Positions 14,167 to 43,418 of a stretch of DNA of 64,000 nt are shown here, piece by piece (positions within the stretch are counted from its first letter, which is position 1; the number at the start of each line of letters is the position of its first letter). The notes under the pieces are model-generated. The model had not been told where the DNA came from, did not search any database, and saw only the letters and a list, made by a program, of their open reading frames with translations. The position numbers and the translations under genes are program-made. The DNA lies in the IMG/VR virus record IMGVR_UViG_3300036944_001289, positions 1-64,000 of that record. One strand, 5' to 3'.

Positions 14167-15033
14167 TTAAAATGTAAGATTATGGATATATAACTTATTT
14201 TTATTCTTCTCTTCGATATTTAAATCGGTACTGTAGCTATTAGTTGTATAAATCTCATCTATACCATTTGCAAATAGAGTATCAACACCTTGACTAAAAA
14301 TACCATGAGTAACGTATAGAATCACATTACCTGCATTCTTTTTCTTAAGAGATTTAGCGAGTTCGATAAAGGTGCGACCACCATCGCAAATATCATCTGC
14401 AATTACTATATCAGCACCATTAAGATCATCCGCAAATATAGAGGTTTCAATAATTTTACCTGTTGCAAGGTCACGAAGTTTATCAGCACGAATAAATCGA
14501 ATATGGTCAAAATACTTAGCAACATTTGCAGTCTTTTTATTTGCACCTGCATCTGGACTTACAAATAGTACACCCTGTAATACACGTTTACAAAACGCTG
14601 TAAAATCATTAATTATTTGTACCTGGTCGATAATTTTAACTCGATCGATTAATGCACCAGTAACATCGCTATGAGGATCACATACGATTACACGATCAAA
14701 ATTCAAATTATTAATAAATTTAGCAAATACCTTTAGGCTATGTGGTTCACCTTTACAGCATGTACGATCTTGTCGGGCATATGGTACATAAGGTATAATA
14801 AGCTCAATACTCGATTTATCACCATAAGTTATCTGTTCATTCTCGATAGCATCCTTAATGAGAGCAAGGGCAAATAAGTCATCGCTATTACGAATACGCG
14901 CTTCAATACGAATTGTATCTTGCGTATTAAAAAACCCAAAGTTTGGTTGAGTTTGTATAAGAACCTCACCACCTGGGAAGGTAGCTTGCTTAATCACAAG
15001 TTCATGTGTTCCTTTATATGTTCGAAAGTTCAT
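14167..15033 (-). CDS. prs: Ribose-phosphate pyrophosphokinase-like protein (PRS/Adps)
   Basis: FPGGE, PYVPYARQDR, DPHS, SPDAGA, DDICDGGRTF, YVTHGIFS. Confidence 0.92.
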   Translation of the reverse strand: MNFRTYKGTHELVIKQATFPGGEVLIQTQPNFGFFNTQDTIRIEARIRNSDDLFALALIKDAIENEQITYGDKSSIELIIPYVPYARQDRTCCKGEPHSLKVFAKFINNLNFDRVIVCDPHSDVTGALIDRVKIIDQVQIINDFTAFCKRVLQGVLFVSPDAGANKKTANVAKYFDHIRFIRADKLRDLATGKIIETSIFADDLNGADIVIADDICDGGRTFIELAKSLKKKNAGNVILYVTHGIFSQGVDTLFANGIDEIYTTNSYSTDLNIEEKNKNKLYIHNLTF

Positions 15034-15097
15034 GTAAGATATTGTAATATTGTTCCCTTGGATTAGTTAAAACTAACACAGAGTAAGCTGAATTATA

Positions 15098-15138
15098 AAA
15101 AAAGGTGGCAGGGCCCGCTACCTCGCGAATGCCCTGCC
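15098..15138 (-). terminator. Intrinsic terminator ending the ncRNA downstream of 15452-16192
   Basis: GGCAGGGC...GCCCTGCC stem followed by a T7 tract on the minus strand. Confidence 0.75.
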
Positions 15139-15450
15139 TGTTGTCATATTTTCATAATATGTGACAAAGAGCGTTTTTTAGCTCTGTTCTTTAAAATGCT
15201 TTGTGTTTTTAGCTTAATACCAGCACTCTACCACTAAGTTACCTGACCATATATACTAACCGGAAATTGGGGGTCAGGAGCTGATTTGAACAGCCGCATC
15301 TGGTTTAAATAGACACTATCTTTTAAAGAACCTTCTTAGTCGGGTTTTGAGCCTCGAGTGAATAGCCTTAGTTTGAACTTGAGCATGACCGGTTTAGACC
15401 CGGATTTCACTTTGAGCCTGGATACTCCCGAAGGAGCCACCCGAAATTGT
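15098..15450 (-). ncRNA. Putative ~350-nt structured RNA with a circularly permuted tRNA-like core (15219-15304)
   Basis: T-arm GGCTG-TTCAAAT-CAGCT, acceptor CCTGACC/GGTCAGG closed by a linker, D-arm ACTT-AGTGGTA-GAGT, closing stems ACCAG/CTGGT and GTTCTTTAAAA/TTTTAAAGAAC. Confidence 0.75.
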
Positions 15451-15451
15451 T

Positions 15452-16192
15452 TTAGTTGAAGATATAGCTAATCAACTTAGCACCGATCTTCTTATTCTTA
15501 TCGACCTCGGTATCGTTAGCACGAGAACGGGCCTGCTTAACTGCACGAGTCAAAGTATCAACTCGACTAAGATACTCAGACTTTTGCGCAGGAGTAATAA
15601 GACCAGACCACTCTTGCTCTTGAATATTACCGATAACCTTGTCTTCATCAACAAGCTGAGTCTGGGCAGGGTGCTTGTCGGTCGCAGGATATAGAACGAT
15701 TACTGACTTTTCCTTCTTCGTACGAGTCTTATTAATTGTACGGGCTTGATAGATACCACCACCACGAGCAGCATCATGTGTAAATCCTTTAGCAGGGTCG
15801 AGAGTAGGAATAGAAAGGATTAAAGAATTAATCTCAATTAGACGCTTCTCAAGTTCAAGAAGAGCGGTAGCAGGTACATCCTTAGCAATTACAGTGCCAT
15901 CTTCAAGAGTAATATCACCGCGAGCTGCAGTATTAGTTTCAGCAACCTGATACGAAGCATCGAGAGCCTTGGTAATAAACCCAGCAATAAGCTTCAATTC
16001 CTTATCAACAGTGGTCTGAATATCAAGCTGAGACTCGACCGTTGACTGACCTTCACCGGAAGGTGTAAATACAATCTTCTTCTCTTCGAAGAGATGACGC
16101 TTCTTTTCAAAGGTCGTGGCGAGTTCGTTACGTACCTTGTTTGTCTGATTTTCGAGAGAATTCTCGACTGCGAGTAGTTCGTGTAGCTTCAT
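15452..16192 (-). CDS. Conserved coiled-coil protein of unknown function (MKLHELLAVE...VPATALLELEK...ATDKHPAQ)
   Basis: 246 aa, high-expression-like codon usage, own promoter motif, followed by structured RNA. Confidence 0.8.
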   Translation of the reverse strand: MKLHELLAVENSLENQTNKVRNELATTFEKKRHLFEEKKIVFTPSGEGQSTVESQLDIQTTVDKELKLIAGFITKALDASYQVAETNTAARGDITLEDGTVIAKDVPATALLELEKRLIEINSLILSIPTLDPAKGFTHDAARGGGIYQARTINKTRTKKEKSVIVLYPATDKHPAQTQLVDEDKVIGNIQEQEWSGLITPAQKSEYLSRVDTLTRAVKQARSRANDTEVDKNKKIGAKLISYIFN

Positions 16193-16252
16193 AATGATAA
16201 TAATTTGTTACATTTTAATTTTATTAAAGTTCCTTAGATTTAATTGTATATC

Positions 16253-16615
16253 TTATGATAAGTTTGCATAGCTCTCAAATTTTAAACTCATTAAACCTTC
16301 TTCTTCTATCATTTTAGTAACGTACTCAATCATGCTGTGGTTAAGAAAATCGTTTAGAATAGCTGCTACTTTCTTATTAAGTTTACCGTTTGTTCTGAGT
16401 GGTATTGCTGCAATTTGTGATTTAAGGTAATAAAGATCTGCTGTTGGCAAACCAATCTTAACAACCTCTTTAAAAACAGGCATAAACTCTTCGAGATGTT
16501 TCTTTTTAGCACCATCTGGTGTTTTGCTACCACAAATCATAAATTGAAATTTAACGCCTTCACCTGTAGCGGCCCACTGATGAAATGTAAAATAGAGTTT
16601 GTAATTATTTGGCAT
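16253..16615 (-). CDS. hypothetical protein
   Basis: Likely start MPNNYK after the pth2 stop. Confidence 0.55.
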   Translation of the reverse strand: MPNNYKLYFTFHQWAATGEGVKFQFMICGSKTPDGAKKKHLEEFMPVFKEVVKIGLPTADLYYLKSQIAAIPLRTNGKLNKKVAAILNDFLNHSMIEYVTKMIEEEGLMSLKFESYANLS

Positions 16616-23653: not shown

Positions 23654-25183
23654 TTAAGCTTTGATTACTTCATAACGGTCACTACAAACTGTATCGATCA
23701 TCATGTTATAAGGTGTTGTTGATTTGTTAGACAAAACACTCTTCAAGATTGAAGGTGAACAGCCTGATACTAAGCAAGTACCTTTATCGTCATATTTAAC
23801 CGGTACATCACTATAAGAGTTAACATTCCAATATACAATTTGAGGCACGTTGTAACCAGCTGCAGCGTACTTTGCCTTAATAGCAGCATGATTAGTTACT
23901 TCACCGCTATTAAGAGAGTCTGGCCCGGTAGCACAATCAAATTGCATATCTGAGATAATATATACATGGGATGGCATTTCAGATTGCGGCACTTTATTAC
24001 TTACGCCTTTATCAAGTATAAGATCAAATACAGATTGTAGATTAGTATTAGCAACCTCACGTCTACCAAGAACATCAGTTACATTTTGTATTAGACTTGT
24101 ACCTGTAATCTTTAAAAGTTTAGCATTATGGGAGAAGATCATAAAATGATCTTTGAATGCACCTTCGTTTCGTTCAGCAAAATAAATTGCAATTGATACA
24201 GCAACATCAATAGGTGCTATGTTATTACCAATATTAGCATTATAATAGTTACAAGAGTCCATTGAAGCTGAAACGTCAGCTACAACAATACCATTATGCT
24301 TATTACCGGCAAGATAATCTGGTAAGGCCTTCCATTGGGCCTCTAGAGTACGATCTACGGACCGTATATTACGAACTGAACGTACAATATCATATGGGTA
24401 CAATACTGAAGCGTTAATCTTTTCTTCACCTTTCTCGACATTAGTTAAAAACTTTGAGTAACGGTCACCGTCATGTTCTTTGAATGCTTTACGGTAAGTG
24501 CTTGCAGCCTTTGAAGGTACCGCAGGATAATTGATCTTGTCCCATTCACCTACACACATTTTGCGTTCCACTACATCGATCTTTTTACGAAGAGCTGATA
24601 GAAGCTTACGATATTGCTTTGGAGAGTAATCTAAAGTAGTACGTACTTTCTTTGCAAGACGTTTGGTTACAGAAGATGAAGCCTGTTCACTTGGTGCCCA
24701 TTTAGCACATAGTGAAGGATTCTTTTCAGATGCATCTTCAATAAGTTTATCAGCAACAAATTTAAGTGCGATTTTTTCAAGAGATGTACCTTCAAGCGTC
24801 TCAAGTACGTTGTCCCAACGAGTAAACTCAGGGATCTGGATCAAGAGGTTCTTAGCTACTTTCTCATCGTTTTGCGCAAGCCACTTAAAGCAGTTACGGA
24901 AGAGCTTACGCTCACCTTGACCTTCACGTACATCTACTAGATAGAAGAGAATCTTAAGAGCGATAGTCTTATCCTCATTATAAGCGGAGCGGAAAAGTGT
25001 AATAGATGCATCATCTGGTTGTGAACGCATTGAACCACCTTTACCAAAAAAATCGAGCAAAGAAGTACCAGTAGTCGAATGACTTACCGCACCATTATGC
25101 GTCTTGATATCTCCTGTAGTTAAAGCACTGATAAGTGCGTTTTGCTTAGGAGCTGTCTTTTTGATTGTTTTTTTAGTTGCCAT
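23654..25183 (-). CDS. DUF2828/TROVE (Ro60-like) protein with C-terminal vWA domain
   Basis: T.NGA.SHSTTG..LLDFF, D.R.GQGER, SLCAKWAPSE, VE.KMC..W..INY..VPS.A, LYPYDIV, MIDAS DVSASM, ISDMQFD, IVYWN. Confidence 0.8.
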   Translation of the reverse strand: MATKKTIKKTAPKQNALISALTTGDIKTHNGAVSHSTTGTSLLDFFGKGGSMRSQPDDASITLFRSAYNEDKTIALKILFYLVDVREGQGERKLFRNCFKWLAQNDEKVAKNLLIQIPEFTRWDNVLETLEGTSLEKIALKFVADKLIEDASEKNPSLCAKWAPSEQASSSVTKRLAKKVRTTLDYSPKQYRKLLSALRKKIDVVERKMCVGEWDKINYPAVPSKAASTYRKAFKEHDGDRYSKFLTNVEKGEEKINASVLYPYDIVRSVRNIRSVDRTLEAQWKALPDYLAGNKHNGIVVADVSASMDSCNYYNANIGNNIAPIDVAVSIAIYFAERNEGAFKDHFMIFSHNAKLLKITGTSLIQNVTDVLGRREVANTNLQSVFDLILDKGVSNKVPQSEMPSHVYIISDMQFDCATGPDSLNSGEVTNHAAIKAKYAAAGYNVPQIVYWNVNSYSDVPVKYDDKGTCLVSGCSPSILKSVLSNKSTTPYNMMIDTVCSDRYEVIKA

Positions 25184-38022: not shown

Positions 38023-38101
38023 TGGTGGGGGCAACCGGAATGCGAGCCGGCATTTTACCTGTGAGAGAGGTATGTCCTTTACGTTTTTAGACGATGTCCC
38101 C
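38023..38101 (-). tRNA. tRNA-Glu(CUC), atypical T-loop
   Basis: TACCT-CT CTC AC-AGGTA, CCA. Confidence 0.75.
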
Positions 38102-41091: not shown

Positions 41092-41479
41092 TGGTGGAGG
41101 TGGCGGGAATTGAACCCGCGTGTTTAACCCAAACCTCACTATTATCTACAAGCTTAGTAGTATTTAATAACTATTTTAAGGTATACTACAACCTGTAGAT
41201 AGTGGTATACATTTATATACTAGAGAATCCCAATGTATAACTGACTCTCTAATCTCACTATATAACGAAATTAAATTTTAGTGAGAATCAAATCTAGTTT
41301 CGATCGCTGTTTATTAAGCAGCGAATGCAAGGGCCTCAACAGGAGCAGCGCTCTTGAAGAAGTTCTTGATGTAATTTACAATGTTGCCATTTGTAGTTTT
41401 GATACTAGTTATAGAGATAATATCAATCTCTGCTTGCAAATAGAGCTGTATCGAATTAAGTCGAATCCTGTACACCCCC
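41092..41479 (-). ncRNA. ssrA: tmRNA
   Basis: 5' GGGGGTGTACAGGATTCGAC, 3' CGCGGGTTCAATTCCCGCCACCTCCACCA with G3:U70; internal tag ORF ...GNIVNYIKNFFKSAAPVEALAFAA*. Confidence 0.93.
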
Positions 41480-41688: not shown

Positions 41689-41767
41689 TGGTGCATCAGA
41701 TGGGATTTTAACCCATGTAAATCTCGTTAAGAGCGAGGACCGTTAAACGAACTCCGGGCACTGATGC
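41689..41767 (-). tRNA. tRNA-Lys(CUU)
   Basis: CTCG-CT CTT AA-CGAG, CCA. Confidence 0.8.
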
Positions 41768-42169: not shown

Positions 42170-42176
42170 ATAAAAA

Positions 42177-42266
42177 TTTATATCTAATGTTCTACCATGT
42201 TGAACTATCCTCCTTGTTCTATTGGGTAAGAGAGGAGCGGACCTTGAACCCGCATCTTTAGATAAA
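42177..42266 (-). ncRNA. Circularly permuted tRNA-like RNA without anticodon
   Basis: ATCTAA, T-arm GCGGG-TTCAAGG-TCCGC, TCCTC/GAGGA acceptor closed by a loop, D-arm GTTC-AACATGGTA-GAAC, TTAGAT. Confidence 0.7.
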
Positions 42267-42502: not shown

Positions 42503-42640
42503 TAAGTATATTTTTTGCGTTTACTGTGCTACCGTTACACTACTCTCCAATAAAGTATAAATTGGGTGGAGAGGTGGGAATTGAACCCACACTAGCATCT
42601 GTATATGATGATTGCGTTTTATTTTTGCTGTATATACTTA
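42503..42640 (-). ncRNA. Y-RNA-like (YrlA-architecture) RNA: CAGCAA terminal stem + permuted tRNA domain
   Basis: TAAGTATA/TATACTTA stem, TACAGCAA, T-arm GTGGG-TTCAATT-CCCAC, CTCTCCA/TGGAGAG acceptor closed by a loop, D-arm GTGT-AACGGTA-GCAC. Confidence 0.8.
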
Positions 42641-43344: not shown

Positions 43345-43418
43345 TGGCTGAGATGGCTGGTAACGCTCCAACTTCTTCGGGGTCAAAGTCCGAGGTAATA
43401 CTTTTATACGACATCTCA
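43345..43418 (-). tRNA. tRNA-Gln(UUG)
   Basis: U1:A72, CT TTG AC loop, G73, CCA. Confidence 0.82.

What the first reader, a model, noticed from the sequence alone, without database searches (positions are those of the whole stretch)
15098..16192. Unknown coiled-coil protein followed by a ~350-nt RNA with a circularly permuted tRNA core
Seen: between the stop codon at 15452 and a strong terminator (15098-15138) there is no ORF, only structure. The 5' part has short hairpins and repeated GCTCAA/GTTCAA/CTAAG words. Next an 11-bp stem (GTTCTTTAAAA/TTTTAAAGAAC) encloses, in order, a T-arm, the acceptor 3' strand followed by C-CCA, a linker, the acceptor 5' strand and a D-arm; the anticodon loop is replaced by the long stem. 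Gene and RNA form one unit with its own promoter motif, located between pth2 and the NAD module. Inference: a ribonucleoprotein in which the protein binds the repeated words and the tRNA mimic acts as a decoy for tRNA-targeting defence nucleases or recruits tRNA-processing enzymes. It lacks the CAGCAA motif, so it appears to be a separate system.
Basis: partly seen in the sequence, partly recalled or inferred. Interest (0 to 1): 0.8.

Follow-up and report, generated by a model that had tools for sequence, protein, structure and literature searches.

The report
Phage tRNA-mimic RNA paired with DUF7873
A phage gene of unknown function (DUF7873) is almost always followed by a long structured RNA whose centre is a tRNA with its two halves swapped, a Y-RNA-like molecule with a new protein partner that is widespread in phages and some bacteria but is not annotated in the records checked.

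Summary
Window 15097-15452 (minus strand) has no ORF and folds into a long rod carrying a circularly permuted tRNA: T-arm, 7-bp acceptor 3' strand, C-CCA, 19-nt linker, acceptor 5' strand, D-arm.

- **Protein:** a full-length Pfam DUF7873 member. It is a confident alpha/beta fold with no structural match, not a plain coiled coil.
- **Conservation:** the RNA follows the gene in 78 of 80 viral contigs, in cultured Rhizobium, Vibrio, Gordonia and Ralstonia phages, and in 28 of 55 bacterial loci.
- **Structure:** covariation is decisive (94.7% of cells paired against 60% shuffled).
- **Neighbours:** no other neighbouring gene is conserved.
- **5' domain:** a stem that starts right after the stop codon encloses hexamer-spaced YUNAR words, 2.4-fold enriched.

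The closest known thing is YrlA, the bacterial Y RNA. My model cross-detects a Ro-linked phage YrlA. Even so, this RNA lacks the Ro-binding motif, fails Rfam's YrlA model, usually has an open 7-bp acceptor with CCA, and occurs in a complete phage genome with no Ro-like gene.

Best reading: a self-contained protein-RNA module with a tRNA-mimicking head. Protein binding and any decoy role are inferred. No transcript data could be obtained. I rate it a new variant of a known kind.

The parts
15452..16192 (-). DUF7873 protein gene (246 aa, stop codon included)
   Evidence: Pfam PF25283 E 9e-68 over the full length. More than 1,600 homologues. AF2 model pLDDT 91 with no structural match.
16250..16278 (-). 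Promoter-like site TTGAGA-17-TAAGAT upstream of the gene (weak)
   Evidence: Such sites are no more frequent here than in shuffles.
15439..15444 (-). P1 stem, 5' strand (UCGGGU), starting 8 nt after the stop codon
   Evidence: MFE fold. P1 of 6-12 bp in 18 of 18 close relatives, and the pair flanking the GGG/CCC core covaries: CG 9, UA 7, AU 1, UG 1.
15424..15438 (-). Small hairpin inside P1 (GGCUCC-UUCG-GGAGU). GNRA-type hairpins occupy this place in relatives.
15335..15417 (-). Array of RYUHAR words (GCUCAA x3, GUUCAA, ACUAAG x2), partly at 6-nt spacing. It also holds the P1 3' strand ACCCGA (15345-15340), with an alternative CACUCGA at 15360-15354.
   Evidence: Word positions. 240 words against 101 +/- 10 in shuffles across 51 loci, with spacing peaks at 6 and 12 nt. 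Present in distant members.
15311..15331 (-). Rod, 5' strand (GUUCUUUAAAA plus the GUGU segment)
15209..15307 (-). Permuted tRNA-like core: AC-stem 3' strand 15304-15300, T-arm 15295-15279, acceptor 3' strand 15278-15272, C-CCA 15271-15268, linker 15267-15249, acceptor 5' strand 15248-15242, D-arm 15239-15225, AC-stem 5' strand 15223-15219
   Evidence: Model R1 79.7 bits. Covariation on 57 sequences. 102-member alignment.
15212..15218 (-). Internal-loop word AUUAAGC (U-Y-A-R) just 3' of the AC-stem equivalent
   Evidence: Recurs at this place in most relatives.
15186..15196 (-). Rod, 3' strand (UUUUAAAGAAC)
15143..15185 (-). Two small 3' hairpins (AGAGC-UAAAAAAC-GCUCU at 15185-15168, and GUCACAUAU...AUAUGAC at 15165-15143)
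   Evidence: A similar A-rich hairpin is seen in L021 and L024.
15097..15138 (-). Terminal hairpin plus T-run, with apical motif UCGCGAGGUAGCGG. Relatives have either this hairpin or an ordinary tRNA here.
   Evidence: terminator-like. The motif occurs exactly once in the window. It is conserved in L010, L021, L024, L042 and L044.

Best explanation
This is a self-contained two-part module: the DUF7873 protein gene and, transcribed right behind it, a Y-RNA-like non-coding RNA of about 350 nt. The RNA has three parts. (1) A 5' domain closed by a stem that starts a few bases after the stop codon and displays tandem, hexamer-spaced YUNAR words. (2) A long interrupted rod formed by the 5' and 3' flanks. 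(3) At the tip of the rod, a tRNA-shaped head in permuted order (T-arm, acceptor stem, D-arm), which is the topology known from YrlA. In most copies, including this one, the acceptor stem is exactly 7 bp, is followed by N-CCA and an unpaired linker, and usually has U at -1. The head is therefore most likely cut by RNase P and trimmed to CCA, leaving a nicked two-piece RNA held together by its helices, as was shown for the M. smegmatis YrlA. A minority of copies keep a closed acceptor hairpin, so the tRNA shape matters more than a free end. Flanking tRNAs or a terminator hairpin set the outer ends. The protein most likely binds the repeated words in several copies. The resulting particle would present a tRNA look-alike to tRNA-binding machinery of the host or phage, playing the part that Ro60 plays for Y RNAs. 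Shown here: the anatomy, its conservation and covariation, the exclusive gene-RNA linkage, and independence from a phage Ro gene. Inferred: processing, protein binding, and the cellular target.
For: The RNA lies directly downstream of the gene in 78 of 80 IMG/VR loci, in cultured phages TM30, D497, Phendrix, phiRSL1 and Ziko, and in 28 of 55 genome loci. No other neighbouring gene recurs in 134 loci. Core covariation: 94.7% paired against 59.8% shuffled and 35-45% slid, with 385 double-sided changes; the D-arm was not selected for and is 97% paired. Of 102 elements, 97 have a perfect 7-bp acceptor, 77 have NCCA with an open linker, 64 have U at -1, and the tRNA tertiary nucleotides are conserved. 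The rod is supported by duplex energies of -25.9 kcal/mol for true flanks against -17.0 +/- 5.9 for mismatched flanks. P1 is present in 18 of 18 close relatives with a covarying flank pair. The hexamer words are 2.4-fold enriched with a 6-nt spacing peak and occur in distant members. In four loci a tRNA sits between the gene and the RNA, and in 14 a tRNA starts 33-45 nt after the core, so the RNA can be released as its own molecule. Model R1 cross-detects the Ro-linked YrlA of phage Snenia at 49 bits. [quoted passage not shown]
Against: The protein has no recognisable RNA-binding domain and no structural relative. About half of the chromosomal genes, including the one on a complete Bernardetia chromosome, have no RNA nearby. 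Similar permuted cores also occur without the gene, for example at window 42510-42602. The acceptor and T stems were part of my selection pattern for the seed alignment, which inflates their pairing scores.
Confidence: 0.6

Rival explanations
1. It is an ordinary YrlA Y RNA whose real partner is the phage's Ro-like protein (window 23654-25183), and DUF7873 is only a neighbouring passenger.
For: The topology is the same as YrlA, and R1 cross-detects a Ro-linked YrlA. The window encodes a DUF2828/DUF7788 protein of the 'Ro-like RNA binding protein' family with no YrlA beside it.
Against: Rfam's YrlA model gives no hit at E<=10. The GNCGAAN0-1G Ro-binding motif is absent at the expected place. 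The complete Ziko genome has the gene and the RNA but no Ro-like homologue. Linkage to DUF7873 holds in 78 of 80 loci, while no other gene recurs. A host-encoded Ro60 was not excluded.
Confidence: 0.17
2. It is a cis-acting 3' element of the DUF7873 mRNA: a tRNA-like processing and stability signal that sets and protects the mRNA 3' end, with no role in trans.
For: The RNA starts 1-15 nt after the stop codon with no promoter or terminator in between. The features expected of an RNase P substrate are present.
Against: In four loci a tRNA separates the gene from the RNA, so the two would be cut apart. The elaborate conserved 5' word array and long rod are unnecessary for end protection. Closed-acceptor variants would not be cut. 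Similar elements stand alone in the tRNA array.
Confidence: 0.13
3. It is a permuted tRNA gene that is matured, through ligation of its ends and opening of the acceptor, into a working tRNA, as in the red alga Cyanidioschyzon.
For: 3' half-linker-5' half order with CCA. A U-Y-A-R word follows the anticodon-stem strand and AA precedes the other strand, loosely like a split anticodon loop.
Against: The word sits at variable distance from the stem. A 20-30 bp rod, not a bulge-helix-bulge, separates the ends. Closed-acceptor variants exist. According to bioRxiv 10.1101/312249, no bacterial equivalent of the splicing endonuclease has been reported. Acceptor and discriminator identities vary freely.
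Confidence: 0.04
4. It is a two-piece (permuted) tmRNA.
For: Permuted order with the CCA-bearing piece upstream.
Against: No Rfam family, tmRNA families included, matches the region, and ARAGORN finds nothing there. G3:U70 and A73 are not conserved. I saw no conserved tag reading frame, though I did not test for one formally. There is a true D-arm and an anticodon stem. The phage already has a canonical tmRNA at 41092-41479.
Confidence: 0.02
5. It is a decaying remnant of two tandem tRNA genes without function.
For: YrlA-type cores are thought to derive from dimeric tRNAs.
Against: All 21 pairs are maintained by compensatory change over about 100 diverged loci and several phyla of hosts.
Confidence: 0.01

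Closest known systems
YrlA (Rfam RF02553), the tRNA-like bacterial Y RNA bound by Ro60/Rsr
   Same: A stem formed by the 5' and 3' ends carries a tRNA-like domain in the order V, T-arm, acceptor stem, D-arm, with the tRNA tertiary nucleotides. It is encoded just downstream of its protein gene in phage Snenia. It sometimes occurs as two tandem RNAs. A 7-bp acceptor version (M. smegmatis) is cut by RNase P and receives CCA. My model detects a Ro-linked YrlA at 49 bits.
   Different: The partner gene is DUF7873, not Ro60/TROVE. There is no GNCGAAN0-1G Ro-binding module. It fails Rfam's YrlA model. An exact 7-bp acceptor with encoded NCCA is the rule rather than the exception. It has an extra 5' domain of hexamer-spaced words and a much longer rod. 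It is present in a phage genome without any Ro-like gene.
Circularly permuted tRNA genes of Cyanidioschyzon merolae and Thermofilum
   Same: 3' half, linker, 5' half in one transcript, with the acceptor opened by RNase P and 3' processing.
   Different: Those are matured into real tRNAs through a bulge-helix-bulge cut and ligation. Here there is no anticodon loop to rebuild, the rod is long, and closed-acceptor variants exist.
Two-piece tmRNA of alpha-proteobacteria and others
   Same: Permuted tRNA-like domain, and two RNA pieces held by base pairing with a CCA end.
   Different: No alanine identity, no tag frame seen, a true D-arm and anticodon stem, and no tmRNA model match.
tRNA-like 3' processing elements (MALAT1 mascRNA, plant mitochondrial t-elements)
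   Same: A tRNA shape used to recruit RNase P and define RNA ends.
   Different: Those are in normal, not permuted, order and have no dedicated protein partner.

Membership tests
YrlA / bacterial Y RNA | tRNA-like domain in permuted order (T-arm, acceptor stem, D-arm) with tRNA tertiary nucleotides, set in a stem made by the RNA's ends | tested here: met
   R1 cross-hits the Snenia YrlA at 49.2 bits.
YrlA / bacterial Y RNA | Ro60-binding module with GNCGAAN0-1G in the 5' strand | tested here: not met
   The motif occurs anywhere 5' of the T-arm in only 10 of 57 loci, mostly in GNRA hairpin loops, and is absent from the window RNA.
YrlA / bacterial Y RNA | Encoded next to a Ro60/TROVE gene | tested here: not met
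   The adjacent gene is DUF7873. No other neighbour recurs. The window's Ro-like gene is 8 kb away. The complete Ziko genome has none.
YrlA / bacterial Y RNA | Scores against Rfam RF02553 | tested here: not met
   No hit at E<=10 in 15000-15550. The positive control, Snenia, scores 39 bits.
YrlA / bacterial Y RNA | Physically bound by Ro60/Rsr | not testable with these tools
   Needs immunoprecipitation. A host Ro60 was not excluded.
Two-piece tmRNA | Alanine identity (G3:U70, A73), tag reading frame, match to tmRNA models | tested here: not met
   The acceptor and discriminator vary freely. No Rfam or ARAGORN hit. No conserved tag frame was seen by eye; it was not tested formally.
Permuted tRNA gene (matured to a tRNA) | Ends that can be cut and joined to restore a 7-nt anticodon loop (bulge-helix-bulge) | tested here: not met
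   A long irregular rod, a variable distance of the UYAR word from the stem, and closed-acceptor variants.
Pfam DUF7873 (PF25283) | Full-length match above the gathering score | tested here: met
   229 bits against a cut-off of 27, covering residues 2-245.
Cas7/RAMP RNA-backbone proteins (considered for the protein) | Significant structural similarity to a RAMP fold | tested here: not met
   Cas7 chains top the Foldseek list only at E 0.02-0.2 with TM below 0.2. This is a lead, not a match.

The most novel reading that the evidence does not exclude
DUF7873 and its RNA form a new class of ribonucleoprotein, independent of Ro60. Several protein copies would coat a hexamer-periodic RNA track while a nicked, CCA-ended tRNA head engages tRNA-handling machinery (RNase P, the CCA enzyme, elongation factors, synthetases, or tRNA-directed immune nucleases). 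Phages with tRNA arrays would use it to protect or manage their tRNA supply during infection.
Probability: 0.2. Interest if true: 0.9.

Novelty: new variant of a known kind. Interest (0 to 1): 0.72.

Why it matters
Y RNAs and their tRNA-like YrlA relatives have so far been defined by Ro60. Here the same tRNA-mimicking module is tied to a different, uncharacterised protein family. That family has more than 1,600 members in phages of Proteobacteria, Actinobacteria and cyanobacteria, and sits in Bacteroidota and Burkholderiales chromosomes. This gives DUF7873 its first functional lead, namely a dedicated RNA partner. It defines an RNA family that Rfam does not detect, and in the GenBank records inspected the region is left blank or given small hypothetical ORFs. 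It also offers cultured systems (Gordonia, Rhizobium and Vibrio phages) in which the long-open question of what the tRNA-like domain of Y-like RNAs does could be tested.

Tried and rejected
- Rfam at gathering and permissive thresholds found nothing in the region, and ARAGORN found nothing there.
- Nucleotide search of GenBank phages gave no match.
- PHROGs, PADLOC and NCBIfam gave nothing for the protein.
- PDB by sequence profile gave nothing. Foldseek against PDB and BFVD gave nothing significant.
- Literature searches for DUF7873, permuted tRNA in phages, and DUF2828/TROVE found no description of this pair. The last query was too unspecific.
- A single-sequence IMG/VR scan for the Ro-like protein returned only the window's own contig, so co-occurrence could not be measured that way.
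- Reading the U-Y-A-R word as an anticodon (it would always be a Leu anticodon) was rejected: its distance from the stem varies, and the body is a class I tRNA shape with a 4-5 nt variable region.
- Read-through translation of the repeat region was rejected informally: the window frame hits TGA after 14 codons, and the hairpin region differs in length between relatives.
- The tandem-tRNA junction artefact was considered. Such junctions score below about 40 bits and lack complementary acceptor strands.

Full report
**What is in the window.** On the minus strand, a 246-aa ORF (16192 to 15452) is followed by about 355 nt without any ORF of 40 aa or more on either strand, ending in a hairpin plus T-run at 15138-15097. 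The stretch folds much better than shuffles (-106.5 kcal/mol, z = -4.0). Read 5' to 3', the parts are:

- a stem strand UCGGGU, starting 8 nt after the stop codon;
- a small hairpin;
- a run of GCUCAA, GUUCAA and ACUAAG words;
- the matching stem strand ACCCGA;
- the 11-nt strand GUUCUUUAAAA;
- a 5-nt anticodon-stem strand and a 4-nt variable region;
- a T-arm with loop UUCAAAU;
- a 7-nt acceptor 3' strand, then C-CCA and a 19-nt linker;
- the perfectly complementary acceptor 5' strand;
- a D-arm with the GG dinucleotide;
- the other anticodon-stem strand and an internal-loop word AUUAAGC;
- the strand UUUUAAAGAAC, two small hairpins and the terminal hairpin.

ARAGORN and Rfam report nothing here, even at E<=10.

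**The protein.** It is a full-length member of Pfam DUF7873 (E 9e-68). It has no PHROG, PADLOC or NCBIfam match. More than 1,600 homologues exist in metagenomes, many on contigs of 100-200 kb. The window itself comes from a 209-kb IMG/VR contig. AlphaFold2 on a 50-sequence alignment gives a confident model (pLDDT 91, pTM 0.77). It is an alpha/beta fold with three helix-hairpin units and one long beta hairpin, so it is not simply a coiled coil. Foldseek finds nothing significant in PDB or BFVD. The weak top of the PDB list is mostly Cas7/RAMP backbone subunits at E 0.02-0.2 and TM below 0.2, which I treat only as a lead. The ESM Atlas shows only DUF7873 clusters and a shorter look-alike, DUF6847.

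**Conservation of the gene-RNA pair.** tblastn finds the protein in 75 cultured phages of very different hosts: Vibrio, Rhizobium, Gordonia, Klebsiella, Serratia, Arthrobacter, Ralstonia phiRSL1 and cyanophages. In the four records I opened, the gene is followed by an unannotated gap of about 450-500 nt (in D497 partly occupied by one tiny hypothetical ORF), and in three of them the locus lies among tRNA genes. A strict pattern for the permuted core (T-arm, 7 nt, N, CCA, linker, perfect 7-nt complement) hits 65 of 80 IMG/VR loci within 700 nt downstream, against 8 hits in 657 kb elsewhere in the same loci. I aligned 57 non-redundant cores (A4) and built a covariance model, R1. It finds the element directly downstream in 78 of 80 viral loci; one of the other two is truncated. 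It also finds it in phiRSL1, TM30, D497, Phendrix (two copies) and Ziko, and in 28 of 55 bacterial genome loci. An all-against-all comparison of the ORFs in 134 loci finds no other recurrent neighbour. The next cluster occurs in 8 loci, and its example overlaps the DUF7873 gene on the opposite strand, so it may be an artefact. The RNA is the gene's only conserved partner.

**Structure evidence.** On A4, 94.7% of cells form standard pairs, against 59.8% after shuffling and 35-45% with partners slid by 1-3 columns. All 21 pairs show changes on both sides (385 cells). The acceptor and T stems were part of my selection pattern. The D-arm (97% paired) and four of the five anticodon-stem pairs (about 90%) were not.

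The flanks form a long interrupted rod. True 5'/3' flank pairs give -25.9 kcal/mol, against -17.0 +/- 5.9 for flanks paired across different loci, and 33 of 57 loci beat 95% of their mismatched partners.

The 5' stem P1 is present in 18 of 18 close relatives (6-12 bp, starting 1-15 nt after the stop codon). The pair flanking its GGG/CCC core is C-G in 9, U-A in 7, A-U in 1 and U-G in 1.

The words YUHAR occur 240 times in the 5' domains of 51 loci, against 101 +/- 10 in shuffles. Their spacing peaks at 6 and 12 nt. Tandem hexamers are obvious in distant members too, such as L069, Vibrio phage D497, chromosomal L135 and Planctomycetota L090.

**Features that bear on processing.** In a 102-member model alignment, 97 elements have a perfect 7-bp acceptor stem and 77 have N73 plus CCA followed by an unpaired linker. 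The base before the acceptor 5' strand is U in 64. From my own knowledge, not checked here, U is the base bacterial RNase P favours at that position. The discriminator varies (C 24, U 21, G 18, A 14). U8, A14, G18G19 and the T-loop are conserved.

The 25 elements without a canonical CCA fall into two groups. Some are chromosomal Bacteroidota copies, with A followed by a non-CCA sequence. In the others the linker is itself a hairpin. Four of these score as a direct closed extension of the acceptor stem (L031, L070, L073, L110). By eye, phiRSL1 and the second Burkholderiales copies also carry a hairpin linker that starts just after the discriminator. A free end is therefore common but not obligatory, which points to the tRNA shape as the conserved function.

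In 33 of 60 viral loci, ordinary tRNAs lie within 2.5 kb, always on the same strand. In 14 loci a tRNA starts 33-45 nt after the core, just past the rod. In four loci a tRNA sits between the gene and the RNA. tRNA processing would then release the RNA as a separate molecule, which argues against a purely cis-acting 3' UTR.

**Comparison with YrlA.** Chen et al. 2014 (PMC4201824) and Wang et al. 2018 (bioRxiv 10.1101/312249) describe YrlA as follows:

- a Ro60-binding stem with GNCGAAN0-1G, plus a tRNA-like domain in the order T-arm, acceptor stem-loop, D-arm;
- usually a closed acceptor stem that is not 7 bp, with no CCA;
- encoded next to Ro60;
- an M. smegmatis version with a 7-bp stem that is cut by RNase P and gains CCA in vivo.

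As a positive control, Rfam finds YrlA (39 bits, below its gathering score of 69) right after the Ro-like gene of mycobacteriophage Snenia. My model R1 hits the same element at 49 bits, E 3e-15. The cores are therefore the same kind of module.

The DUF7873-linked RNA nevertheless fails the defining tests. It gives no RF02553 hit. The GNCGAA motif is not at the expected place (10 of 57 loci, mostly in GNRA loops). The adjacent gene is DUF7873. The window does encode a Ro-like protein: a 509-aa DUF2828+DUF7788 protein at 23654-25183, 34-37% identical to proteins annotated 'Ro-like RNA binding protein', with TROVE and vWA signals in the Atlas. That gene has no YrlA beside it. The complete genome of Gordonia phage Ziko has DUF7873 and the RNA but no Ro-like homologue (best tblastn E 1.4). 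A host Ro60 cannot be excluded.

**Other readings.** Four alternatives were weighed.

- **Two-piece tmRNA:** contradicted by the absence of alanine identity and of any tmRNA model hit, and I saw no conserved tag frame. The phage has a canonical tmRNA at 41092-41479.
- **A permuted tRNA gene matured to a real tRNA:** unlikely, because there is no anticodon loop to rebuild and closed-acceptor variants exist.
- **A decayed tandem-tRNA remnant:** refuted by the covariation.
- **A decoy for anticodon nucleases:** unlikely without an anticodon loop. A decoy or platform for factors that read the elbow, acceptor stem or CCA end remains possible.

**Limits.** About half of the chromosomal DUF7873 genes have no RNA nearby. 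The window contains two further permuted tRNA-like elements in its tRNA array that are not next to DUF7873 and carry different loop motifs. The permuted tRNA unit is therefore broader than this gene. What is specific here is its fusion to the hexamer-word domain and its linkage to DUF7873.

**Verdict.** It works like a YrlA-type Y RNA but is not a member of that family by the tested criteria, so I rate it a new variant of a known kind. Protein binding to the words and the biological target remain inferences.

Noticed in passing
window 42510-42602 (-), closing stem about 42640-42632 with 42504-42496: A second permuted tRNA-like element lies in an unannotated gap of the tRNA array, between tRNA-Leu and tRNA-Lys. 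It has a perfect 7-bp acceptor, C-CCA, a 13-nt linker and its own 9-bp closing stem AAGTATATA/TATATACTT. Its loops carry CAGCAA and AAACGCAA repeats instead of YUNAR words. It scores 61.6 bits with R1, and there is no DUF7873 gene nearby.
   Followed up: partly
window 42173-42265 (-): A third, more degenerate permuted tRNA-like element (45.5 bits) lies between tRNA-Arg and tRNA-Asn. It has a 3-nt insertion before CCA and a hairpin just upstream.
   Followed up: partly
window 23654-25183 (-): A 509-aa DUF2828+DUF7788 protein belongs to the family annotated 'Ro-like RNA binding protein' in mycobacteriophages (705 phage records). It has no YrlA beside it here, so the window's only Y-like RNAs lie elsewhere.
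   Followed up: partly
window 41092-41479 (-): A canonical one-piece tmRNA (Rfam 133.9 bits) lies inside the phage tRNA array. ARAGORN did not report it.
   Followed up: no
window 41692-41767, 38026-38101, 43348-43418 (-): Rfam calls three further tRNAs that ARAGORN did not list.
   Followed up: no
window 15097-15138 (-); L010, L021, L024, L042, L044: The terminal hairpin has a conserved apical sequence (YCGCGWGSUAGCGR) in several relatives, although the stem varies. It may be more than a terminator.
   Followed up: partly
L038 4080-4152; L074 3650-3724: In two related viral contigs ARAGORN calls a suppressor-type tRNA (anticodon UUA). In L074 it starts about 40 nt after the DUF7873-linked RNA; in L038 it lies about 270 nt downstream.
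   Followed up: no
L006 3851-3935 and 4002-4087; L145 16398-16478 and 16543-16655; L123, L128, L137, L140; L051; L067: Some carriers have two permuted cores in tandem after the gene, reminiscent of YrlA/YrlB pairs. In Burkholderiales the first has a Leu-type D-arm, and the linkers are hairpins.
   Followed up: partly
L145 16130-16243 and 16389-16598 (Ziko gp125, gp126); L005 3925-4020: Small 'hypothetical protein' ORFs annotated in GenBank records lie in, or overlap, the region occupied by the RNA and may be miscalls.
   Followed up: no
L100, L103 (Bernardetia sp. OM2101 chromosome) and other Cytophagales loci: Chromosomal DUF7873 genes are followed directly by a terminator, with no RNA within 6 kb. 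The RNA may be elsewhere in the genome or absent.
   Followed up: partly
D-arm of the cores (e.g. window 15239-15234) compared with the 5' words: The repeated words (GCUCAG, ACUUAG and similar) resemble the 5' strand of the tRNA D-arm. It is unclear whether this is coincidence, ancestry or mimicry.
   Followed up: no
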